A DNA stretch of 64,000 nt, taken from positions 62,001 to 126,000 of IMG/VR virus record IMGVR_UViG_3300045971_000344. One strand, given 5' to 3'. This document shows positions 16,730-51,334 of this stretch, in pieces. Every line of letters begins with the position of its first letter. The first letter of the stretch is position 1. The notes under the pieces were generated by a model. That model saw only the letters and a program-made list of their open reading frames with translations. It was not told the origin of the DNA and ran no database searches. The translations under genes were made by a program, and so were the position numbers.

Positions 16730-18709
16730 ATGAAGTTTTCAGATGTAGTAGCTGATCTAAAGAAAAGCGGATTATCCGAGGCTAAGGCTCTTGAAGTCGT
16801 AAAGACCAGACTTGCCGCAAAGGGGCACGAGCTCACCCCTGTAAAGATGCAACTGTTCCATAATACTTGGGAGACTACAGAAGCCCCGGTGGTTAATAAG
16901 CCCCAAAAGACTAAGAAAGAAAGGGCGGTTAAACCGTCAGGGCCTGTAGTAATTAATCCCTTGGTCGCCCCAAGCATAGATAACGCGGACGAACTTTTTA
17001 AAGCTCTTGCTACTTTTGGACTCGCAGTAATAGCCTGGACAAATGGGGTGAAGTTAGACCCAATTAGACAGCTCTTGTCAACTAATAAGCCCACCTTAGA
17101 TAGCTTCTTCAAAAACTCTAAGATGAATACAACCGCGTATAATGTAATATGCGGGTTAATTTTAGAGAAAAAAGCGTACAGCGCAGACAAAAGAAAGGCC
17201 GATGTTACCGCCTTTGGAAATGATTTAAAAGGAATACCTGATATTTTGTCTTCAAGGCAATATAAGTTATTACCAGCCAAAGTAACCTATCTAAAGAACA
17301 TAGCAGGATATTTGAAATCTAGTGCACCCACTGATAATGCTTATAAAAATATCGTAAATAAGGCCTCCTCTATTAGGGTCCCTCAAGCATCCGCCTTATT
17401 TACGTCCCACGTTGCCGAAAAGGTTAATCTTCCAGCTAACATAGGCGAAATGGTAACCAACTATAAAAAATTAAATAAAAAATTCGGTGGGAATGAAGGT
17501 TACACTATTCCAACAGACACTTTGAAAAAATATAGAGATACTCCTACAAAGGAATACACTAATTATTGTGCAATTGAAAAGGATTTGAATGCTCAACTTA
17601 AGTTGTTGACCCGGGTTGTAGTAGATAGTAGTGGGCAACAGACGATGGATGTGGAAGACTTTAAGAAACAGATAAAAGCAAAAGGTTTTGACTTTAATAA
17701 AGTTCCCGTTGGATTCATTGGTCGTATTGATGCTCAAGGAAAGTTCTATACAAAAGAAGGGTACTTGCTAAAGGACCAGCCTTCTGGTGTAATAAAAACA
17801 ATGAGTACAAAAGCGTATAATTCTAAAGATGGAACTGGTGCATACTGTGTGTACTTAAAAGCTGGTGGAAAGGCCCAACGTTGTTACACCATGATGCACC
17901 ATAGCGGTAAGCGAGAAGATAAGAAACAAGATATCGTAGACGATTTTATTAAGAATATGGTCGCCTATAGAAAACACTGGATGAAGGACTTAAAGGCTGG
18001 GTCCAAGATCTTAACAGACAAAGCAATAGCTGCATTGGTTATTGAAATAATGTTCCAGCTCTGTCCGAGACCGGGCTACGAAGAACATGGAAACAATAAG
18101 AAATTTGAAAATACAAAAGGGTTTATTTATCTTACCCGAGGAGAAGTTAAGCTCGAAGGTAACGATATTCACTTTAAATACACAGATAAGAACGGACCTC
18201 AGCATTTAATTTACACTAAGGGAGAAATGTACGGATCAGTTAGTGATGATACCCTTGTAGTTAACTGCTTAAAGAAATTAATGGAGAATAAAGATAAAGA
18301 TGAGTATTTATGGAAATACAGTGGAGATAACGTTGACTACGACCAGATTAAGAATTATGCAAGATCTGTAATACCCGGGTTTAACTTACATAAGTTTAGG
18401 AATTCTAAAGCGTCAATGATGGCAAAAGACATGCTAGGTGCGTGTAAACTCCCTAAAGGTTCTACCCCTAAAGAAGTATCAGATTACTACATGGATGTAA
18501 TGACAAAGGTAGGAGAAGAACTAGGTCATAGATCGGGTGAAGAAGCGAGTCCCTCAATGGCAATTTCTTCATATGTCTTAAAAAGCATCTCCAATGAGTT
18601 CTTTGATAGGTATGATGTTAGTCCTACTCAAAAAATAGCTGCTCAGATAAATACTGCAGAAGCTTCATCTTCGGGGTTGACGGTCCACATAGGCCGAAGA
18701 AAGTCATGA
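16730..18709 (+). CDS. type IB DNA topoisomerase-like protein with long N-terminal extension
   Basis: pentad R (CPRPG), K (FKYTDKNG), R (HKFRN), H (LGHR), Y (SSYV) in poxvirus TopIB order and spacing. Confidence 0.8.
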   Translation: MKFSDVVADLKKSGLSEAKALEVVKTRLAAKGHELTPVKMQLFHNTWETTEAPVVNKPQKTKKERAVKPSGPVVINPLVAPSIDNADELFKALATFGLAVIAWTNGVKLDPIRQLLSTNKPTLDSFFKNSKMNTTAYNVICGLILEKKAYSADKRKADVTAFGNDLKGIPDILSSRQYKLLPAKVTYLKNIAGYLKSSAPTDNAYKNIVNKASSIRVPQASALFTSHVAEKVNLPANIGEMVTNYKKLNKKFGGNEGYTIPTDTLKKYRDTPTKEYTNYCAIEKDLNAQLKLLTRVVVDSSGQQTMDVEDFKKQIKAKGFDFNKVPVGFIGRIDAQGKFYTKEGYLLKDQPSGVIKTMSTKAYNSKDGTGAYCVYLKAGGKAQRCYTMMHHSGKREDKKQDIVDDFIKNMVAYRKHWMKDLKAGSKILTDKAIAALVIEIMFQLCPRPGYEEHGNNKKFENTKGFIYLTRGEVKLEGNDIHFKYTDKNGPQHLIYTKGEMYGSVSDDTLVVNCLKKLMENKDKDEYLWKYSGDNVDYDQIKNYARSVIPGFNLHKFRNSKASMMAKDMLGACKLPKGSTPKEVSDYYMDVMTKVGEELGHRSGEEASPSMAISSYVLKSISNEFFDRYDVSPTQKIAAQINTAEASSSGLTVHIGRRKS

Positions 18710-19827: not shown

Positions 19828-19849
19828 TTTATATTTGAGTGGTGTATTA

Positions 19850-19986
19850 CGGTGCATCACTAGCGACACCTGCCCAATGTTAGATACAGTTGTACCCTTA
19901 GTGTCTTGCACATCCAATAGGGAACTTCTCCAAACAAAGACATTTGGATACAAGTGGTGCGACAACCCGGAGAGACGGGTTAACTA
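19850..19986 (+). ncRNA. unnamed structured element, copy 1
   Basis: shares GCGACACCTGC, CCCTTAGTG, AAGTGGTGYGACA and GGAGAGAC hairpin with 21408..21548. Confidence 0.55.
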
Positions 19987-19991
19987 AATGA

Positions 19992-21386
19992 GTGAGAGTG
20001 GGATGGGGTATGCCAAAGATATTTGACTGTTTTACGTTCTTCAATGAGTTTGAACTTCTGGAAATTCGTTTGAACGAGTTAAAAGATGTTGTAGACACTT
20101 TTGTTATCTGCGAATCCAGTTATACCTTTACGGGCAAACCTAAGCAGTTGTTATTGGCAAATAACTTGGGCGCCCTTAAAGGGTTTAACGTAAAATTACT
20201 GGCGTACAGCCCACACACTCCAGCTGAAAATGCTTGGGATAATGAACGGGGGCAAAGGGCATATCTAAAGGTAGGTCTGGACGAACTGGCTATTGAAGAC
20301 AATGACTTGGTTATGCTTACAGACGTGGATGAGATACCATCTGCCGAGATCATAAGAAAGATTAATCCAATTCAGATAATTGATTTAGAAATGGAGACAT
20401 CTTATTACTATGTGAACAATAGGACTAGCGAAGTTTGTTACGCGCCTAAGCTATTTAAATCACACTGGTTAAAAAGCTTTAGCATTGACCAAATACGGAA
20501 CATGAATCCTGGGTATTTCGTAGCAAATTCAGGAAATCATTTTTCTTACTTAGGTGGGATTGAGCGTATTAAAGATAAAATTGAGTCGTTCTCCCACCAA
20601 GAGTTTAATAATGAGGCATTTAATACGACTGAGAAATTAGAGCAGAAATTGAGCTCTAACGTAGATCTGTTTAATCGTAAATTGGATTATCGGACAATAC
20701 CTTTGTCTGCAGTAAGGAACTGTCCACAGTATTTATTGGATAATCAAGAACGCTTTTCACACATGATAAAGGTTACCCTACCTCAGTTGGATCTACCTCA
20801 GGTTACGCTAATTGCTATTGATTGTGTTGACCCAGTTAGAGCAGAACGAGTCTTGGAGATTTGTAAGGGTCATTGTAACTTCGGGTCAATAAAGCTCTTA
20901 ACCTCTGGTTATACCTCTAGTGAGTACGCAGTAAAGATTTCTAATATAGGATCTCTTAAGGAGTATACTGAGTTTATACTAACGGAACTGTATAAGCACA
21001 TAGACACCGAATACGTTATGCTTGTCCAGCACGATGGGTACATCTTGGATTCGTCTAAGTGGGACCCGGAATTCTTAAAATATGACTATATTGGGGCACC
21101 TTGGGATTCAAGGTTATTAGACCAGAAGGTTTCAAATAACTACTTGGTCGGTAATGGGGGCTTTAGCTTAAGGTCCAAAAAGTTATGCAAGCTCACGGCT
21201 AAAATGAGTCATAGATTGTTGAGACATGAATTTGAAGATGTTTCGATATGTCAGCTCAATAGGTCATATCTAGAAACCTTCGGTATTAAGTACGCGCCCG
21301 TAGAGCTCGCAAGACAGTTTAGCTGGGAAACTGAGAGTAGACCACCTGGTGGTACTTTTGGGTTTCACGGTAAGGACAAACTTTAA
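19992..21386 (+). CDS. glycosyltransferase family 17-like domain fused to DUF5672-like domain (start probably ATG 20010)
   Basis: FDCFTFFNEFELLEIRLNEL..VDTFVICES; QHDGYI...WDPEFLKYDYIGAPW...VGNGGFSLRSKK. Confidence 0.85.
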   Translation: MRVGWGMPKIFDCFTFFNEFELLEIRLNELKDVVDTFVICESSYTFTGKPKQLLLANNLGALKGFNVKLLAYSPHTPAENAWDNERGQRAYLKVGLDELAIEDNDLVMLTDVDEIPSAEIIRKINPIQIIDLEMETSYYYVNNRTSEVCYAPKLFKSHWLKSFSIDQIRNMNPGYFVANSGNHFSYLGGIERIKDKIESFSHQEFNNEAFNTTEKLEQKLSSNVDLFNRKLDYRTIPLSAVRNCPQYLLDNQERFSHMIKVTLPQLDLPQVTLIAIDCVDPVRAERVLEICKGHCNFGSIKLLTSGYTSSEYAVKISNIGSLKEYTEFILTELYKHIDTEYVMLVQHDGYILDSSKWDPEFLKYDYIGAPWDSRLLDQKVSNNYLVGNGGFSLRSKKLCKLTAKMSHRLLRHEFEDVSICQLNRSYLETFGIKYAPVELARQFSWETESRPPGGTFGFHGKDKL

Positions 21387-21407
21387 GTACGTGCTGCATA
21401 AACCGCG

Positions 21408-21548
21408 GAGTTGCGTACTGCGACACCTGCCTGACACTAACGTAGTATAATGTTTTCCCTTAGTGCTCGTAGCACGTGCAGGGGCATTTATCCACCAATG
21501 AAAGTGTTTAGATAAAAGTGGTGTGACACGCTGGAGAGACAGCGATAA
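21408..21548 (+). ncRNA. unnamed structured element, copy 2
   Basis: diverged copy of 19850..19986 with compensatory stem changes. Confidence 0.55.
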
Positions 21549-21569
21549 GCATTTAGGCTATAATTATAC

Positions 21570-21644
21570 CACGGGTTACCTCAGTGGTAGAGGACATTCC
21601 TCATAGGGATAGAAGTCGCAGGTTCGATTCCTGCACCCGTATCA
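21570..21644 (+). tRNA. tRNA with CAT anticodon (Met or Ile2), atypical
   Basis: cloverleaf: ACGGGT/ACCCGT acceptor, CCTC/GAGG D arm, CTCATAG loop, GCAGG-TTCGATT-CCTGC T arm; no intact CCA. Confidence 0.85.
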
Positions 21645-21648
21645 AGAT

Positions 21649-21803
21649 TTCCAAGTCACGGTTAAGTATGAGAACTATCAGACTTCACGCTAAGCGTTTT
21701 CTCTTGTTAGCTTGCACTGACTACTTTTTAAACGTATTCCTTACAAAAAACCGAGCCACTGTGGGTGGGAAGAATTATTCAGGGGAAGTTACGTGACTTG
21801 GAA
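21649..21803 (+). ncRNA. candidate ~155-nt structured RNA between two tRNAs
   Basis: perfect 12-bp terminal inverted repeat TTCCAAGTCACG/CGTGACTTGGAA. Confidence 0.4.
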
Positions 21804-21814
21804 CAAAATTTTAT

Positions 21815-21889
21815 AGGGGATTCGCCAAGCGGTAAGGCAACTGGTTTTGATCCAGTCATTCACTCGTTCGATCCGAGTATCCTCTGCCA
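21815..21889 (+). tRNA. tRNA-Gln(TTG)
   Basis: AGGGGAT/ATCCTCT acceptor, ACTGG-TTTTGAT-CCAGT anticodon arm, TTCGATC T loop, encoded CCA. Confidence 0.95.
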
Positions 21890-21897
21890 ATTACGAC

Positions 21898-21981
21898 TTG
21901 TGCTATATTCCAGGCGCATCAGGAGAAATCTTGACCTATGGAAGCGGCTAATAAACGTGCAGAAATAACCGTATAGCACAA
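21898..21981 (+). ncRNA. candidate ~84-nt structured RNA
   Basis: 10-bp terminal stem TTGTGCTATA/TATAGCACAA; inner TTCCA/TGGAA and TCAGGA-GAAA-TCTTGA hairpin. Confidence 0.35.
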
Positions 21982-21999
21982 AAGATTTGGAGCGCGTAG

Positions 22000-22854
22000 A
22001 TGAAATTAAAAGTATGCATAGAGGAATCTCTAGCTATAGATAAATATTGTTTCAACTTCCCTAAGGATGACCAAAAAGCTCAGTATGCAAAGGACTTCGC
22101 AAAACAGCTAAAAAGATATTTACTTGAAGGTTTTACTGAGCCAAACACTATAAACAAAATTGGATATTTAGCCCCTAAAGAACTTATTGAAAGTAAACCT
22201 TTAGTAGTATATAGAATATGGAAATTCACCCCAACAAGAGCTTTGAGACTAGCATGCGAAGATTCTTTTAAGATAAAACTCAAGGGTAGGCCCGCATATT
22301 CAGCTACGCTTGATAATATTCTTAAAATGAAGTCTCTAAAAGAGAACATTTTAGAGACTATCTTAGATTGTATTCACGATGGAACTATTGTAATAGTCTC
22401 TAAGGTTAAAACGCATAAGTATATAAACTTAGTTAAATCCGTAGAGTGGTTAATTTCTAACTATGGAGGAGATAAACCTGAAGTAGTACCCGTAAGTAAC
22501 GCACGAAAAACAAAAAAAGTAAACAGTACTCCAGACACTGTTTCTTTAGATGAAAGTGCAGTTAAAATACTGGAAAAAGAAAAAGAAGTTATAGTTCTAG
22601 ATAAAGTTGAATGGATGAAAAACTCTGTAGTAGCTATTGGCTGTTATAACTGTGACAACCAAAGCGCTAATCTTTTACCACCTAATTTAAACTCAGTAAA
22701 AATAAGTTTTGACTTAGCTGAAGACATAGATAAAAATATGATAAAGTCTGAACGAGAGTTTAGAAATAAAAATAACCCAGTTAAACTAATAAAAAGCTTA
22801 ACTCTAAGAGAGAAAAAAGAATTAGAGGAAATGCAAAGGCAAAGGGACTTCTAA
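22000..22854 (+). CDS. hypothetical protein (MKLKVCIEES N-terminus)
   Basis: 284-aa ORF. Confidence 0.8.
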   Translation: MKLKVCIEESLAIDKYCFNFPKDDQKAQYAKDFAKQLKRYLLEGFTEPNTINKIGYLAPKELIESKPLVVYRIWKFTPTRALRLACEDSFKIKLKGRPAYSATLDNILKMKSLKENILETILDCIHDGTIVIVSKVKTHKYINLVKSVEWLISNYGGDKPEVVPVSNARKTKKVNSTPDTVSLDESAVKILEKEKEVIVLDKVEWMKNSVVAIGCYNCDNQSANLLPPNLNSVKISFDLAEDIDKNMIKSEREFRNKNNPVKLIKSLTLREKKELEEMQRQRDF

Positions 22855-22877
22855 AAATTCTTAGATACCCTTAGAGT

Positions 22878-23387
22878 TTGATTTTAGTGAGTAAAGTCTG
22901 CACGATGGTAGTTATGTATCCTAGGGGAACATCGTGGTGAGTGAGGCCCTCTTATAAGTCCCACAAGGGCATAGAGGCGCAGGGGATTGCCGAAGTGGAG
23001 AAGCCCAGGAGCAGGCAAGGATGTATGCGTGAAGTAGTATAAGTACTTGAGACGTGGCTACAAAATGAGAAGCCGGAGTACTGAGAAAGCGTGTGCGAGG
23101 GTATCCAACTAGACAGGACTAACCGTAAAGTAAGGCCTAACGATAAGGCAGCGGCGAACAGTAACTATGCACAAAACCTGTACTCTATTTGTTTATGGGG
23201 AGCATAGCGAAGATAACGGGTACTTGAGAGTGTGCCGAAACTCTCCTTGATTCGGATGGGTGCATTATTAGCGTTTACAACTTCTAGCGAATTTAAGTCC
23301 TAGGATGGGACGTATATTCAAGTGCGTGTGCTTGCGCTCTGATGCACTGCTTGTGGTGGTTTGAGTCCACCAACTCACTAAAATCAA
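22878..23387 (+). ncRNA. large structured ncRNA, GOLLD/ROOL-like
   Basis: ~510-nt gap without a long ORF, closed by a perfect 15-bp stem, with T-loop-like GGTGG-TTTGAGT-CCACC at the 3' end, near tRNAs and tmRNA. Confidence 0.6.
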
Positions 23388-23418
23388 GATCAAAAATAAC
23401 CTAAAAGGGAGAAACAAA

Positions 23419-23685
23419 ATGCCAGGTATTCCAACTTTAATCAAAGGTTCCGTAAAGAACGCAGCAGGTGTAGGTATTGATAGTGCGGCAGTTAAAGGTG
23501 TACTAGGTACTGGATCCTTTACTACTACAACAGCCGCAGATGGATCGTATTTTGCATCGTGGGTAGGAACAGGTACGATTATTATTACAGCTACAAAAAC
23601 GGGGTATCAAACTACATCGGTTAGCTGTCCTATAACTAAACAAGGTGGAACTGTTACTGCACCTACTATTGTAATGCCTGTATGA
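23419..23685 (+). CDS. small Ig/prealbumin-like fold protein (carboxypeptidase-regulatory-like); possible virion decoration protein
   Basis: IKGSVKNAAGVGI..A.V...TTTAADGSY...ITATKTGYQT. Confidence 0.6.
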   Translation: MPGIPTLIKGSVKNAAGVGIDSAAVKGVLGTGSFTTTTAADGSYFASWVGTGTIIITATKTGYQTTSVSCPITKQGGTVTAPTIVMPV

Positions 23686-23840
23686 TAGAAGAACCTAAAG
23701 AAGAGATTAGTCAAGAAGAAATTGAGAAAAAGATGTGCCAGTGGAAAAAGTTTGAAATAGCTATGATTATTTTTATAGGTACGCTGTTTACTGGAGGTAT
23801 CTGGTTTCTAAGCCGGTTACACCATATAATAGCAAAATGA
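23682..23840 (+). CDS. small membrane protein (52 aa, not in ORF track)
   Basis: ATGA overlap; IAMIIFIGTLFTGGIWF helix. Confidence 0.5.
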   Translation: MIEEPKEEISQEEIEKKMCQWKKFEIAMIIFIGTLFTGGIWFLSRLHHIIAK

Positions 23841-23844
23841 TTTA

Positions 23845-24257
23845 GGGGGCGTAAAGGTTTCGACTGGCGGTAATAGATATTAGTTGCGCTCGGAGGATGA
23901 TGGTTGGCCTCTTGAATAACCCATCACTTATTAATTGCCAACTTTGCAAATGCAGTAGCAGACAACTATGGTTTTGAGGCTCGCCTCGCTGCCTGAGTTG
24001 TAACAATCCCTACAGAAAATCGTAGGTACGGTAAGTAGTAGATAACATTTGTAGCTACTCGCCGCGTAACAGAAGATGTGGATGGTTAGCCGCCCACTGA
24101 CTAATGAACTCCAGGTGTTGGTCTGGCTAAACACCGACTAGGTGGGAAAGATTTGTCTATTTTGTTAATAGCCACCGAAATACTAAATAGACTATGAGCG
24201 TAGGGACTATATTGAAAAGCTGTTAGGACGTGGGTTCAACTCCCACCGCTTCCACCA
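23845..24257 (+). ncRNA. ssrA: tmRNA
   Basis: 5' GGGGGCGTAAAGGTTTCGAC, 3' GTGGG-TTCAACT-CCCAC CGCTTCC ACCA, internal tag ORF 23937..23996 ANFANAVADNYGFEARLAA*. Confidence 0.95.
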
Positions 24258-24432
24258 ATTTGCTGACCTAGTAGTAACCCGCTGTGTACCTTAATGGGTC
24301 AAAAGTGACCTGGGAGTAGTCTGTAAATAAACCAGATGAAAACACCTATTTACATCTAGGCGATATAGGGCAGAATGAATGGTCGAACGGTCAGTAACAC
24401 TGTTTAACAATCCGTATACCAGGTAGCTAAGT

Positions 24433-24897
24433 ATGGGCAACCTAAAGTGTTGCGCCGCAAAAGGTATACGGAGATATCCTATGGTATCGCTACCATGCCG
24501 GACGGAGCCAAAAAAAATTATGAGTAATGACCTTGTTATTATAGAAGAAGGCATAATGCGAGCCTACCCAAAGTTTGATTTGGCTCGCAATAGAGTGACT
24601 ATCTTCAAGGGTAAAGAGTTTGACATAAATGATTTTACTTGCCTTCAAATGCTGACTAATCATGACCCAGGCGCTGTGGCTATGGTAACTATTGATGGTC
24701 AAGACCTTTGGATCTATTATGATAATGGTGCTCCAAAACGAGTAGTTGGCATCGAAGAACGAAAAGTCTTGTGGGAGAAATATACTGAGTTTATGATAGC
24801 AGTTCGTAGGAAGATGTTACCTGTAACTAATCCAGAACATCCAGATTATGTTGAGCCAAAGCTAATAAAAGAGAGCAAGGTAATCGTTATTAGTTAG
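24433..24897 (+). CDS. hypothetical protein (true start probably ATG 24520)
   Basis: upstream part overlaps hairpin-rich sequence. Confidence 0.65.
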   Translation: MGNLKCCAAKGIRRYPMVSLPCRTEPKKIMSNDLVIIEEGIMRAYPKFDLARNRVTIFKGKEFDINDFTCLQMLTNHDPGAVAMVTIDGQDLWIYYDNGAPKRVVGIEERKVLWEKYTEFMIAVRRKMLPVTNPEHPDYVEPKLIKESKVIVIS

Positions 24898-25056
24898 TAG
24901 GGAAGTTAGCACTCTGAACATCTGCTGCCACGGCTAACGGCTTGTAATGTGGGGTAATGCAAAATAATTAGGGAGTGTTTTTGTCGGCGCCACCCTAGGC
25001 GAGTACATCTCGGGCTTGAGCTCTGTACTCGCCACCCTAAATAACTAGGAGGTCAA

Positions 25057-26216: not shown

Positions 26217-26417
26217 ATGGCAAAGGGAACGGTGAAATGGTTTAATCCAGAAAAAGGCTTTGGCTTTATCGCACAAGATGGAGGAGAAGACGTATTCGTA
26301 CATTTTTCTGCTATTCAGAGCGAGGGATTCAAGACCTTGAATGAAGGCGATTCTGTTAAGTTTGACGTAGTTAGCGGTCAAAAAGGAATGCAAGCGTCTA
26401 ACGTAGTAGTAGCCTAA
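26217..26417 (+). CDS. cspA: cold-shock protein
   Basis: [15 protein letters not shown] (RNP1), DVFVHFSAI (RNP2), 66 aa. Confidence 0.98.
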
Positions 26418-26440
26418 AAAGAATTAGTAGAATGAAACAG

Positions 26441-26482
26441 TGGCCTTGAGCATTTGATTGTGCTCAAGGCCATTCTCTTTTT
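26441..26482 (+). terminator. rho-independent terminator after csp
   Basis: 12-bp stem TGGCCTTGAGCA/TGCTCAAGGCCA followed by T-rich tract. Confidence 0.85.
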
Positions 26483-27353: not shown

Positions 27354-28442
27354 ATGACAATGATAGCAACCTCAGCCTGGACCGGCAGTATGAGCAACAA
27401 TCAGTACATAATTTACACGAGTCCTGCGGGGACGGAATTGACCTCACAGTACCAGACGCAACAGGAAGTTCCACAGGAGATACCGGAACTGGTGGGACCT
27501 CTGCCAAAAGAAGAGGCAGACAGAAGAAAGAACCGCCAGAAACAGATTCAACAGATAGCGAAGTTAAAGAAGAAGGGTAAAGTAACAGCGGGGTCTAATA
27601 TACCACCTAAGGTATTCTTTAAATTTGTGAAGTCCAAACTGGACTCGATTGACCAAGACCAGTTACAGAGAAATCTTGATAAGCTGGTTAAGTTAGTGGT
27701 TGTCACTGAGGAAATCGGACAGCAGGCTTTGTTTGAAGAATTCTCTACCCAGCTTGCCATAGCAGTCAGGGAACAAGAAGCATCAGCAGCAGGTTACAAC
27801 AAGCGAATTGAACTCCGTCATATCCAGCGTTTTATCAAATCCGTAACAGATAGACTGGTTAAGTTCAAACCGCTGGAGGAATTCCCTAGGGTAATACCTT
27901 CCAATATCATGAAGGAAATTAAACATTGTCAGGATCTTTGTATCTTCGATGAGTTTCATGTACTGTTCATCGACCATGTAGAGTCGTCTAAGGAAAATGA
28001 AGAGTTGAAGACCAATAAGCAGAAGGTAAAAGAAAAAGACCCTATCTTATTCGGGGCCTTCAAATTTCAACCAGACGTGCTGTACTATATAGTGGATTGG
28101 ATAGATGAATACTGCGATTTGTCTTTTAGAGAACTTTTGAAGGCCCTTACTCTTGATGACCCTACATTTGAGCTTAGTCTTGTACAAACTGTAAATAAAG
28201 AGTATGTGGATTCGATTGTAAAGGAAGTCCATGATAGAGTTGAACGGTTGAAGAAAACACGACCATCTAATTTTAAAGATCTAATGGCACAAGAAGAGCA
28301 GGTAAAAGAACAGAGAAAGAAACAAAGAGCAACAACAAGCTCTAATACTCCTACTAAGAAAGAAGATCAGTCATTAGGCGATAAGATAGTTGATGCACTA
28401 AAAATCCCCTTTGGACGAAAGAAAGGAAAAGCTAATGTTTAA
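27354..28442 (+). CDS. hypothetical protein
   Basis: 362 aa, AGGAGG RBS. Confidence 0.85.
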   Translation: MTMIATSAWTGSMSNNQYIIYTSPAGTELTSQYQTQQEVPQEIPELVGPLPKEEADRRKNRQKQIQQIAKLKKKGKVTAGSNIPPKVFFKFVKSKLDSIDQDQLQRNLDKLVKLVVVTEEIGQQALFEEFSTQLAIAVREQEASAAGYNKRIELRHIQRFIKSVTDRLVKFKPLEEFPRVIPSNIMKEIKHCQDLCIFDEFHVLFIDHVESSKENEELKTNKQKVKEKDPILFGAFKFQPDVLYYIVDWIDEYCDLSFRELLKALTLDDPTFELSLVQTVNKEYVDSIVKEVHDRVERLKKTRPSNFKDLMAQEEQVKEQRKKQRATTSSNTPTKKEDQSLGDKIVDALKIPFGRKKGKANV

Positions 28443-38267: not shown

Positions 38268-38436
38268 CAGATTGCCAGACGCAGGATTAGATACCCTTCG
38301 ACTAGAGCGGTGTTGGCATAAGAGTAGGCAGTCTGCAAATAGTTGGGTAATTATGGGCGGTCGCCCCGTTCGGTACAGTTAGGAAATAATGAGGAGGGCG
38401 TACTCTGAGAATGTTCAACCCTGTACTAATTACCCA
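38268..38436 (+). ncRNA. candidate structured RNA
   Basis: CAGATTGCC/GGCAGTCTG and TGGGTAATTA/TAATTACCCA stems in a gap without ORFs. Confidence 0.4.
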
Positions 38437-38440
38437 TTAG

Positions 38441-38662
38441 TTGGTGGTTAGTCTAAGTCAAGGACACTAAGAGAACAAGACCAGCGGGGTATAATGGTAC
38501 GTGGGTTAATAACCTGTGGTGCAGTAGTACTCTATGCGGATAGTGTAGAGAAGCGCATAATCTATCCTGACGTATGAATTAGGGGCGCAATGTTCTTATC
38601 AGGTCTTTCCTGCAACACTTACCTTCTCCGAAGATGTTGGTATAACTTAGGCTAACCACCAA
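38441..38662 (+). ncRNA. candidate ~220-nt structured RNA
   Basis: 18-bp closing stem TTGGTGGTTAGTCTAAGT/ACTTAGGCTAACCACCAA (one G-U). Confidence 0.5.
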
Positions 38663-38675
38663 ACAAAGGAAATTT

Positions 38676-38990
38676 ATGTTTTTCCATGATATGAACTACA
38701 CAATACCTCAAGAATTTAGACTTCCATGGTTGTTATTTCTTTTGATGTATATTCCATTTCTTTACTGGTTTATTATTCGCGATGGATACAGGAAGTTTAA
38801 ATGGTTGAGGGAAATTCATGAGGTAGGATTTTATAATTGGGTATGGTTTGTACTATATCTAAAACGCAATGAATTTCATCCATCACTGGATAGGATAAAA
38901 ATAGTTGATGGTAGGTATTTATTGGAGGAACGACAGGGCAGAAGACAACTCGCGCATAAAATAGCTTTAAAGTTTGAGGAGCTAAAATGA
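38676..38990 (+). CDS. hypothetical membrane protein
   Basis: AAGGAA RBS; hydrophobic segment. Confidence 0.65.
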   Translation: MFFHDMNYTIPQEFRLPWLLFLLMYIPFLYWFIIRDGYRKFKWLREIHEVGFYNWVWFVLYLKRNEFHPSLDRIKIVDGRYLLEERQGRRQLAHKIALKFEELK

Positions 38991-51151: not shown

Positions 51152-51334
51152 ATGGAGACCGTGATGCCAAAAACTGATTTGTCCGATAGTGAAATCGCTA
51201 CCTTAATCCTGATCCGGCTTGAAGCTATACGGGATAAGAAATATGCGTCTAACCGAATGGCAGCCCAGGCATTACTTGACGCAATCAAAGACTGTAAAAT
51301 AATAAAGAACAGAGACCGAGGACAAAATGAGTGA
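51152..51334 (+). CDS. hypothetical protein
   Basis: packed ORF. Confidence 0.5.
   Translation: METVMPKTDLSDSEIATLILIRLEAIRDKKYASNRMAAQALLDAIKDCKIIKNRDRGQNE

What the first reader, a model, noticed from the sequence alone, without database searches (positions are those of the whole stretch)
19850..25050. An RNA island: at least six unnamed structured elements interleaved with tRNAs, tmRNA and single cargo genes
Within ~5 kb nearly every intergenic stretch is structured. Several are closed by long near-perfect terminal stems (10, 12 and 15 bp; 18 bp at 38441), and csp, an RNA chaperone, follows at 26217. My best candidate for an undescribed system is a phage-encoded suite of small and large RNAs released from one polycistronic precursor, which could act as decoys for host RNA-targeting defences or for RNAP or ribosome control. 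Terminal inverted repeats also recall retron a1/a2 arms, but no RT is present in the window. The function is entirely inference.
Basis: partly seen in the sequence, partly recalled or inferred. Interest (0 to 1): 0.72.

Follow-up and report, generated by a model that had tools for sequence, protein, structure and literature searches.

The report
Phage RNA island, new pseudoknot motif
A 295-kb pond phage packs two tRNAs, a tmRNA and seven long GC-rich spacers into 5 kb, and two of those spacers are copies of a widespread pseudoknotted RNA that matches no Rfam family and recurs in well over a hundred other phages, often beside tRNA or capsid genes.

Summary
Window 19.8-25.1 kb holds tRNA-Met, tRNA-Gln, a tmRNA and seven spacers of 110-564 nt with 45-50% GC, against 37% for this genome's intergenic DNA.

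- **Two spacers (19857-19983, 21414-21547):** these are paralogous copies of one RNA motif. It has a short stem P1 closing an invariant loop GACACCU, a variable insert, a box GUGGUGYGAC whose GGUG pairs with the loop CACC (a pseudoknot), and a 5-bp hairpin P2 with an invariant GAGAGA loop.
- **Distribution:** the motif is in at least 119 IMG/VR contigs, about 50 bacterial genomes or MAGs, and cultured phages such as Phaeobacter phage MD18, where it lies between two tRNA-Leu genes.
- **Support:** covariation is strong in P1, P2 and the pseudoknot. No Rfam 15 family matches it.
- **Three further spacers:** these are bracketed by perfect 10-, 12- and 15-bp stems. They are the only long-range bracketing stems among 76 long spacers in the genome. 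They have no homologues.
- **Last two spacers:** only raised GC supports them.
- **Exclusions:** the genome has no reverse transcriptase, RNase III or SmpB, so a retron is excluded.

Function is inferred, not shown. I read the spacers as modules of one processed polycistronic RNA.

The parts
19838..19861 (+). 10-bp hairpin directly 5' of motif copy A
   Evidence: MFE and centroid fold. An analogous 6-bp hairpin precedes copy B.
19857..19983 (+). Pseudoknot motif copy A: P1 GC/GC 19863-64 / 19872-73; loop GACACCU 19865-19871; ~80-nt insert with two hairpins; box GUGGUGCGACA 19954-19964; P2 19965-19969 / 19976-19980 with loop GAGAGA 19970-19975
   Evidence: Model R2 49.6 bits, E 2e-9. R1 42.5 bits. 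Pattern match.
21387..21418 (+). Hairpin 5' of motif copy B
   Evidence: Read from the sequence and the fold.
21414..21547 (+). Pseudoknot motif copy B: loop GACACCU 21422-21428; box GUGGUGUGACA 21518-21528; P2 21529-21533 / 21540-21544. Ends 22 nt before tRNA-Met.
   Evidence: Model R2 55.3 bits, E 1e-10. The P2 stem differs from copy A by compensatory changes, ACCCG/CGGGU against CGCUG/CAGCG.
21570..21643 (+). tRNA-Met (CAU), with a C1-A72 mismatch
   Evidence: ARAGORN and Rfam, 47.3 bits.
21649..21803 (+). Spacer RNA candidate bracketed by a perfect 12-bp stem, filling the gap between the two tRNAs
   Evidence: Fold z = -2.44. Bracket-stem test 0/200 shuffles. No homologue found.
21815..21889 (+). 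tRNA-Gln (UUG)
21898..21981 (+). Spacer RNA candidate bracketed by a stem of 10 WC + 1 GU bp
   Evidence: No homologue found.
22877..23388 (+). ~510-nt RNA candidate closed by a 15-16-bp stem. Its 3' end carries a tRNA-like module: a D-arm-like hairpin 23297-23311, and a T-arm-like hairpin 23354-23372 stacked on the closing stem.
   Evidence: No Rfam match even at E <= 10. No homologue found.
23845..24257 (+). tmRNA, tag ADNYGFEARLAA (19 residues if read as in the related bacterial tmRNA)
   Evidence: ARAGORN; Rfam 121 bits. Tag region nearly identical to a Pseudomonadota smpB-ssrA locus.
24258..24432 (+). Spacer after the tmRNA; structure unsupported
   Evidence: z = +0.74.
24898..25056 (+). 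GC-rich spacer (0.497) with a 10-bp hairpin flanked by a direct repeat CCACCCUA; unsupported by comparison
   Evidence: z = -0.76; GC.
26439..26474 (+). Strong intrinsic terminator after csp; likely end of the transcription unit
   Evidence: 15-bp stem followed by a U run.

Best explanation
The 5-kb stretch is the tRNA/tmRNA gene cluster of an uncultured 295-kb phage whose host is probably a member of the Pseudomonadota. It reads as one co-directional transcription unit that ends at the terminator after csp.

**Shown**
1. Two spacers are members of a widespread RNA family that matches nothing in Rfam 15. It is a compact H-type pseudoknot (P1 with loop GACACCU, pairing to GGUG) followed by a 5-bp hairpin with an invariant GAGAGA loop. 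A variable domain of 2 to about 130 nt sits between the two halves.
2. Three further spacers are bracketed by long perfect stems.

**Inferred**
1. The spacers are autonomous RNA modules. Host enzymes that mature the neighbouring tRNAs and tmRNA (RNase P, RNase E/Z, possibly RNase III on the long stems) cut them out of the precursor, or leave them as protected ends.
2. The pseudoknot motif acts as an intercistronic boundary module. It folds on its own wherever it is placed in a heavily transcribed polycistronic RNA (after capsid genes, between tRNAs). Its most likely role is to define and protect processed RNA ends.
3. Its roughly 25 invariant nucleotides across very different hosts imply contact with a universal host component or an intrinsic activity.

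The tmRNA works with host SmpB, since the phage has none.
For: **The motif is real**
- The 22-nt pattern has 2 matches in the window against 0.17 expected.
- The covariance model finds 149 matches, 133 distinct, in 98 loci.
- P2 is 96.6% paired, and all 5 of its pairs show double changes. P1 is 83.8% paired. The covariation score is 0.603 against 0.167 in shuffles (0/500) and 0.04-0.12 for slid controls.
- The pseudoknot's middle pair covaries: 154 instances have U with ACACC, 22 have C with ACGC, and only 5 are discordant (Fisher p = 3e-23, not corrected for phylogeny).
- The genome holds three copies, all on the coding strand.

**The motif matches nothing searched:** no Rfam 15 match at the gathering threshold or at E <= 10, and no paper holds its sequence strings.

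**Context**
- It usually starts 8-13 nt after a same-strand stop codon and ends shortly before the next same-strand ORF start.
- Tandem arrays of 3-5 copies lie after major head genes.
- 15 of 155 instances lie within 300 nt of a tRNA, all on the same strand and mostly tRNA-Met.
- In Phaeobacter phage MD18 it fills the 80-nt gap between two tRNA-Leu genes.
- No protein gene is shared in common between the jumbo phage and three small motif-bearing phages. Only four scattered pairwise hits appeared.

**Bracket stems and GC:**

**One unit:** a strong + strand terminator is found only after csp.

**No phage SmpB, RNase III or RT:**
Against: - There are no RNA data for this phage.
- Metatranscriptome contigs of relatives of a small motif-bearing phage cover the capsid gene but do not resolve the motif array.
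- The three bracketed spacers and the two remaining spacers have no homologue anywhere searched, so there is no covariation for them.
- Their folding z-scores are modest.
- A passive end-protecting role does not by itself explain some 25 invariant nucleotides.
- Half of the last-in-array copies sit 7-14 nt before an AUG that lacks a Shine-Dalgarno sequence, which points toward translation instead.
Confidence: 0.45

Rival explanations
1. The pseudoknot motif is a trans-acting decoy or sponge. Phages make it in high dosage, through tandem arrays and placement in the most transcribed units, to occupy a conserved host factor or an RNA-targeting defence.
For: - Arrays of 3-5 divergent copies.
- Placement after capsid genes and inside tRNA clusters.
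- Invariant loops across hosts from cyanobacteria to Pseudomonadota.
- No shared phage protein partner.
Against: No target has been identified. Solitary copies between ordinary genes are common. The motif also occurs in bacterial chromosomes and MAGs, though perhaps inside mobile elements.
Confidence: 0.2
2. The motif is a new small self-cleaving ribozyme that cuts polycistronic phage RNAs at gene borders.
For: - Its size (about 45 nt minimal), pseudoknot and many invariant unpaired nucleotides are typical of small ribozymes.
- It is phage-associated, multi-copy and adjacent to tRNAs. By my own knowledge, HDV-like theta ribozymes also sit beside phage tRNAs.
Against: No Rfam ribozyme family matches it. 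The pistol-like closing helix was tested and is absent: 3.61 against 3.67 in permutations. There is no biochemical evidence.
Confidence: 0.15
3. The motif is a translation-initiation element. It presents GGAG in the P2 loop and docks on the 30S subunit to start translation of the next gene where that gene has no Shine-Dalgarno sequence.
For: - About half of 90 last-in-array copies have ATG 7-14 nt after P2, with an ACAYUUUU spacer and no other SD. Copies that are followed by a normal SD sit farther away.
- GGAG is invariant.
- The loop CACCU resembles the 16S rRNA 3' tail (my own reading of the sequence).
Against: Internal array copies, and copies directly before or between tRNA genes, have no start codon to serve (window copy B). 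The linear distance from GGAG to AUG is about 16 nt.
Confidence: 0.15
4. Spacers 3 to 7 are not functional RNAs. They are decayed tRNA genes or recombination scars in a fast-changing tRNA cluster, and their stems are relics or plain processing or terminator hairpins.
For: - They have no homologue anywhere, and their neighbouring genes are ORFans.
- The 3' end of the 564-nt spacer scores as a degenerate class-II tRNA only at relaxed thresholds.
- Folding z-scores are weak.
Against: Three consecutive spacers carry the only long-range bracketing stems in the genome. Their GC is 8-13 points above that of other spacers. No paralogues or target-site duplications suggest mobile elements.
Confidence: 0.25
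5. The inverted repeats are retron a1/a2 arms or templates of another reverse transcriptase (for example UG27-type ncRNA arrays).
For: Terminal inverted repeats; phage ncRNA arrays that template cDNA exist (bioRxiv 10.64898/2026.09.22.753630).
Against: There is no RVT_1 match in the whole phage genome, nor in four near-complete array-bearing phages and one fragment.
Confidence: 0.01

Closest known systems
Phage T4 tRNA gene cluster with stable RNAs C and D (own knowledge)
   Same: Small stable RNAs of unknown function are interleaved with tRNA genes, co-transcribed with them, and released by host processing enzymes.
   Different: No sequence or Rfam relation. This island also holds a tmRNA, protein genes, a ~510-nt element and a motif that is shared across many unrelated phages.
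Mu-gpT-DE and similar orphan phage RNA motifs in Rfam (own knowledge of the family; Rfam searched here)
   Same: A conserved structured RNA lying just downstream of major head protein genes, with function unknown.
   Different: No match to any Rfam 15 family. The architecture differs (pseudoknot plus GAGAGA hairpin). It forms tandem arrays and is linked to tRNAs.
tmRNAs and tRNA arrays of huge phages (own knowledge)
   Same: A jumbo phage carries a one-piece tmRNA and tRNAs but no SmpB. The tag matches that of a bacterial lineage.
   Different: Nothing unusual in the tmRNA itself.
ROOL / GOLLD large ornate RNAs next to phage tRNAs (own knowledge)
   Same: A ~510-nt GC-rich non-coding element beside tRNA and tmRNA genes in a phage.
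   Different: No match to ROOL, GOLLD, OLE, raiA, RNase P or group I intron models at E <= 10. No homologues, so no covariation.
UG27 reverse-transcriptase ncRNA arrays in phages (bioRxiv 10.64898/2026.09.22.753630)
   Same: Tandem arrays of sequence-diverse, pseudoknotted RNA units in phage intergenic regions.
   Different: UG27 units are about 150 nt and always accompany an RT and two accessory genes. No RT is present here.
Type III toxin-antitoxin RNA arrays such as ToxI (own knowledge)
   Same: Tandem pseudoknot-forming RNA units; phages can carry mimics of them.
   Different: ToxI repeats are near-identical direct repeats next to a toxin gene. Here the copies diverge in every stem and no toxin gene is adjacent.

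Membership tests
tRNA | Cloverleaf and score above the Rfam/ARAGORN threshold | tested here: met
   21570-21643 and 21815-21889. The tRNA-like module at 23286-23380 passes only at relaxed thresholds, so I do not file it as a tRNA.
tmRNA | tRNA-like domain, tag reading frame and pseudoknots; Rfam RF00023 above gathering score | tested here: met
   121.2 bits against a threshold of 47.
Retron ncRNA | Adjacent reverse transcriptase | tested here: not met
   No PF00078 match in the whole genome.
Any Rfam 15 family (pseudoknot motif) | Covariance-model match at the gathering score or at E <= 10 | tested here: not met
   Window copies; eight short-form loci; a tandem array at E <= 10.
Any Rfam 15 family (564-nt spacer: ROOL, GOLLD, RNase P, introns, tmRNA variants) | Covariance-model match at E <= 10 with lax filters | tested here: not met
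   One search returned only chance-level hits to unrelated families.
Pistol ribozyme | A helix pairing the strand 5' of the pseudoknot's 3' half with the strand 3' of the hairpin | tested here: not met
   Best helix 3.61 nt against 3.67 in permutations. No Rfam match.
UG27 ncRNA array | Co-located UG27 RT and accessory genes | tested here: not met
New pseudoknot motif family (defined here) | P1 closing the loop GACACCU (or GAACGCC); downstream GGUG/GGCG pairing to the loop; GAC; 5-bp P2 with GAGAGA loop | tested here: met
   Window copies score 49.6 and 55.3 bits, full length, with model R2.
Self-cleaving ribozyme (generic) | Site-specific self-scission | not testable with these tools
   Needs in vitro transcription and a cleavage assay.
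Discrete stable RNAs processed from a precursor | Defined 5' and 3' ends in infected cells | not testable with these tools
   Only DNA runs hold this phage. Metatranscriptome contigs for a relative of another carrier were uninformative.

The most novel reading that the evidence does not exclude
The GACACCU/GAGAGA pseudoknot is a new functional RNA class. It would be either a small self-cleaving ribozyme or a high-dosage decoy for a universal host component (the ribosome's 3' tail, tRNA 3' ends, or a conserved RNase or defence nuclease). Phages of many lineages would insert it into their most transcribed units. The bracketed ~510-nt RNA with a tRNA-like end would be a second new large phage RNA.
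Probability: 0.35. Interest if true: 0.85.

Novelty: new variant of a known kind. Interest (0 to 1): 0.68.

Why it matters
Phage tRNA clusters are usually annotated as tRNAs plus junk spacers. Here, two spacers belong to a pseudoknotted RNA family that matches nothing in Rfam 15 or the searched literature and has unusually strong sequence conservation. It spans phages of cyanobacteria, alpha- and gamma-proteobacteria and many uncultured lineages. It forms tandem arrays after capsid genes and also sits between tRNAs.

The family has cultured carriers, including Phaeobacter phage MD18, the Planktothrix/Synechococcus phages Pag-Yong1 and MinM2, and more weakly Pseudomonas phage Medea1. Its function can therefore be tested directly. 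Whatever that function proves to be (processing signal, ribozyme, ribosome element or decoy), it would explain a recurrent feature of phage late operons and tRNA islands.

Tried and rejected
1. **Known RNA families.** Rfam at gathering and at E <= 10 on the island, on the 564-nt spacer alone, and on motif loci gave nothing beyond the tRNAs and tmRNA.
2. **Retron or RT-templated arrays.** No RT was found.
3. **Phage RNase III, SmpB and T7-type RNAP.** All absent. The RNAP control rang nowhere, so that particular negative is weak.
4. **Synteny-based covariation for spacers 3-7.**
   - The neighbouring 284-aa ORF and the TopoIB-like protein match only themselves among 5.8 billion proteins.
   - GenBank phages share only the tRNA-Gln gene.
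   - Glycosyltransferase relatives in IMG/VR carry no motif or tRNAs.
   - A pattern specific to the window's long-insert subtype found nothing real in IMG/VR or JGI metagenomes.
5. **Paralogues of the other spacers in the genome.** None.
6. **Pistol-like closing helix.** Absent.
7. **A phage protein shared by all motif carriers.** None convincing.
8. **T-arm pattern search for relatives of the 564-nt spacer.** It returned only true tRNAs, coding hits and an unrelated minihelix group.
9. **Expression.** Only DNA runs hold this phage. Metatranscriptome contigs for another carrier end inside the capsid gene and do not resolve the array.
10. **Sigma-70 promoter and terminator scans.** Counts are no higher than in shuffles.
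11. **Literature.** Searches by sequence string and by keyword found no description of the motif.
12. **MAFFT alignment for formal pseudoknot counts.** It mis-registered the variant class, so the pseudoknot table was computed by script instead.

Full report
**What the window is.**
The window is bases 62001-126000 of a single 294,944-bp virus contig that CheckV estimates at 100% complete. Only two pond-metagenome DNA runs hold it.
- Its proteins are very distant from known phages. A TopoIB-like protein is about 25% identical to those of the jumbo phages PaBG, Lu11 and phiRSL1.
- That protein and the 284-aa ORF inside the island have no homologue except themselves among 5.8 billion proteins, at the E-value limits used.
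- Synteny-based comparison of the island is therefore not possible.

**Checking the observation.**
ARAGORN and Rfam confirm tRNA-Met (21570-21643), tRNA-Gln (21815-21889) and a one-piece tmRNA (23845-24257). csp is real. Between the genes lie seven spacers of 110-564 nt. Their GC content is 0.42-0.50, against a mean of 0.368 for this genome's intergenic regions, and they form its densest cluster of long GC-rich spacers.

Folding energies alone are unimpressive. The z-scores are -2.1, -0.2, -2.4, -0.2, -1.6, +0.7 and -0.8. Inverted repeats seeded by 10 nt occur at roughly the chance rate.

The specific claim of terminal stems holds.
- I measured, in each of the 76 intergenic regions of at least 100 nt, the longest perfect helix between the first and last 60 nt.
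- Only five reach 10 bp, and three of those are the consecutive island spacers (12, 10 and 15 bp; 0 of 200 dinucleotide shuffles each).
- The other two are short local hairpins, one of them the csp terminator.
- The 18-bp stem near 38441 is also real and brackets about 190 nt in front of an ORF.

**The main result: a repeated motif.**
The first two spacers align to each other. They share GCGACACCUGCC, CCCUUAGUG and AAGUGGUGYGACA, followed by a 5-bp hairpin whose stem differs by fully compensatory changes under an identical GAGAGA loop.
- A 22-nt pattern from the 3' part occurs twice in the window against 0.17 expected.
- Nearly all of those contigs also carry the GACACCU box 2 to about 130 nt upstream.
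- A covariance model built from 27 short-insert copies (R1) finds 149 matches, 133 distinct, in 98 loci.
- It also finds a third copy in this genome at 51261-51310, outside the window.
- A second model (R2) scores the two window copies full length at 49.6 and 55.3 bits.

**Structure of the motif.**
- *P2:* 96.6% paired, and every pair shows double substitutions.
- *P1:* the 2-6-bp stem that closes the 7-nt loop is 83.8% paired, again with double substitutions.
- *Overall:* the covariation score is 0.603, against 0.167 in column shuffles (0/500) and 0.04-0.12 when the partners are slid.
- *Pseudoknot:* the loop ACACC pairs with GGUGU downstream. A variant class has ACGCC, or ACGC(A)CAC, in the loop and GGCGU in the box. 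The counts are 154 U/ACACC, 22 C/ACGC and 5 discordant (Fisher p = 3e-23, not phylogeny-corrected).
- *Rejected helix:* a further closing helix, which would have made the fold pistol-like, is not supported.
- *Insert:* the domain between P1 and the box ranges from nothing to two hairpins. The two window copies have about 80-nt inserts with two hairpins and an extra 5' hairpin each.

**Is the motif known?**
No Rfam 15 family matches it. This holds in the window, in eight loci with short forms and in a tandem array at E <= 10. Full-text searches for its sequence strings and for descriptive keywords found nothing relevant. The recently described UG27 arrays are RT-dependent units of about 150 nt. 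Neither this phage nor four near-complete array-bearing phages and one fragment have an RT.

**Where the motif sits.**
- It usually begins 8-13 nt after a same-strand stop codon and ends close to the next same-strand ORF start. By a crude gene call, flanking genes are co-oriented in 144 of 184 cases.
- In phages of about 40 kb with terminal repeats it forms arrays of 3-5 diverged copies directly after the major head gene. Solitary copies lie elsewhere in those genomes.
- Downstream genes vary: small unknown proteins, large terminase, tail protein.
- About half of the last-in-array copies are followed after 7-14 nt by ATG, with a U-rich spacer and no Shine-Dalgarno sequence.
- Fifteen of 155 distinct instances lie within 300 nt of a tRNA, all on the same strand and mostly tRNA-Met. 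That is several-fold above the tRNA density of those loci.
- In the cultured Phaeobacter phage MD18, one canonical copy (53.5 bits) fills the 80-nt gap between two tRNA-Leu genes in its tRNA cluster. This is the same situation as window copy B, which ends 22 nt before tRNA-Met.
- Weaker or variant copies occur in Planktothrix phage Pag-Yong1, Pseudomonas phage Medea1 and Cronobacter phage CS01. BLAST alone also hits Synechococcus phage MinM2 and Microcystis phage Mwe-JY26.
- In the one-genome-per-species collection the raw pattern count (96) is near chance. Even so, about 50 loci are true full-length matches. They come from cyanobacteria, Pseudomonadales MAGs, Planctomycetota, Gemmatimonadota, Microbulbifer, Bradyrhizobium and Defluviicoccus. 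Where readable, they lie in mobile-element-like contexts.
- The jumbo phage and three small carriers share no convincing common protein. Any partner must therefore be host-universal, or the RNA acts on its own.

**The other spacers.**
- *Spacer 3* lies between the two tRNAs and *spacer 4* lies after tRNA-Gln. Their bracketing stems start within 5-8 nt of the tRNA ends.
- *Spacer 5* is the 564-nt spacer. It folds into a 15-16-bp closing stem with many helices of probability 0.7-0.97.
- Its 3' end carries a T-arm-like hairpin (a 5-bp stem with a 7-nt UUUGAGU loop) stacked on the closing stem, and a D-arm-like hairpin. ARAGORN calls this a class-II tRNA only at relaxed thresholds.
- The same T-arm sequence occurs in genuine phage tRNAs. 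The module may therefore be a decayed tRNA or a tRNA-like domain.
- None of these spacers has a paralogue or a homologue anywhere I could search. Their status rests on stem statistics and GC content alone.
- *Spacers 6 and 7* have no positive evidence beyond GC.

**Transcription and processing.**
Everything from about 19.6 to 26.4 kb lies on the + strand. The only strong + strand terminator follows csp at 26439-26474; the one other + strand hit is a weak 5-bp hairpin inside the glycosyltransferase gene. Promoter-like hits are no more frequent than in shuffles. One long precursor is thus plausible but unproven. The phage encodes no RNase III, SmpB or RT, so processing and tmRNA function would depend on the host.

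A metagenomic contig with glnD, corA, smpB and ssrA (Pseudomonadota by its GlnD) carries a tmRNA related to the phage's. The last 12 tag residues and about 55 nt of coding sequence are nearly identical. The rest is much more diverged. This points to the host lineage and to capture or mimicry of the host tmRNA.

**How it most likely works.**
Shown: the anatomy and conservation of the pseudoknot motif, its sense-strand intergenic placement, and the non-random bracketing stems.

Inferred: the spacers are autonomous RNA modules of a polycistronic precursor, and the pseudoknot motif marks and protects processed boundaries in highly transcribed RNAs. I give this about 0.3 for the motif's function specifically, and 0.45 for the overall picture.

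The rivals are listed with their tests: a trans-acting decoy (0.2), a self-cleaving ribozyme (0.15), a ribosome-docking or translation element (0.15), and non-functional relics for spacers 3-7 (0.25). The roughly 25 invariant nucleotides across hosts from cyanobacteria to proteobacteria are the strongest hint that more than passive structure is involved.

**Verdict.**
The retron idea is refuted. The tRNAs and tmRNA are ordinary. The value of the finding lies in the pseudoknot motif, a widespread family that matches nothing in Rfam 15 or the searched literature and now has culturable carriers. A lesser point of interest is the three bracketed orphan spacers, including a ~510-nt RNA candidate with a tRNA-like end.

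Noticed in passing
G000:C1:51261-51310 (10.7 kb upstream of the window start): Third copy of the pseudoknot motif, in short form, after a lysine-rich ORF. Its loop is GACCCCU and its box is GUGGAGUGAC, which gives a C-A mismatch at the pseudoknot's middle pair.
   Followed up: partly
window 38427-38676: An 18-bp stem (one G-U) brackets ~190 nt of a 293-nt GC-rich spacer just upstream of the ORF at 38676. The architecture matches the bracketed island spacers. No Rfam match; z = -1.17.
   Followed up: partly
window 23845-24257 and L257:9642-10035: The phage tmRNA shares its first 20 nt and a nearly identical tag-coding stretch with the ssrA of a Pseudomonadota contig (glnD-corA-smpB-ssrA-integrase). 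Read as in that relative, the phage tag would have 19 residues rather than ARAGORN's 12.
   Followed up: partly
window 21570-21643: The tRNA-Met has a C1-A72 mismatch, an initiator-like trait, but lacks the three G-C pairs in the anticodon stem. tRNA-Met is also the tRNA most often found beside the motif in other phages.
   Followed up: no
window 16730-18709 and 20010-21386: A eukaryotic-type topoisomerase IB-like gene, and a fusion of glycosyltransferase family 17 with DUF5672, flank the first motif copy.
   Followed up: partly
window 27354-28442: A 362-aa ORF matches a PHROG annotated as transposase (E = 1e-21) but no Pfam or NCBIfam model. A 191-nt spacer follows it. I did not test for a TnpB-type guide RNA.
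   Followed up: partly
G000:C1:1-83 and 294732-294814: An 83-nt exact direct repeat joins the two contig ends, consistent with a circularly permuted or terminally redundant complete genome.
   Followed up: no
G000:C1:220749-223016: A second cluster of long spacers (211-534 nt, GC 0.40-0.46) lies outside the window. It has no motif copies.
   Followed up: no
L232, L233, L237, L243, L248, L250, L254 (IMG/VR): A group of marine phage contigs carries a tRNA-like minihelix: a 9-bp stem enclosing AUAG plus a T-arm with the same sequence as in the 564-nt spacer. It is otherwise unrelated.
   Followed up: no
L260:1972-2170 (Planktothrix phage Pag-Yong1): Two motif-like copies lie just upstream of a small gene annotated as Cas9/Csn1 family.
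   Followed up: no
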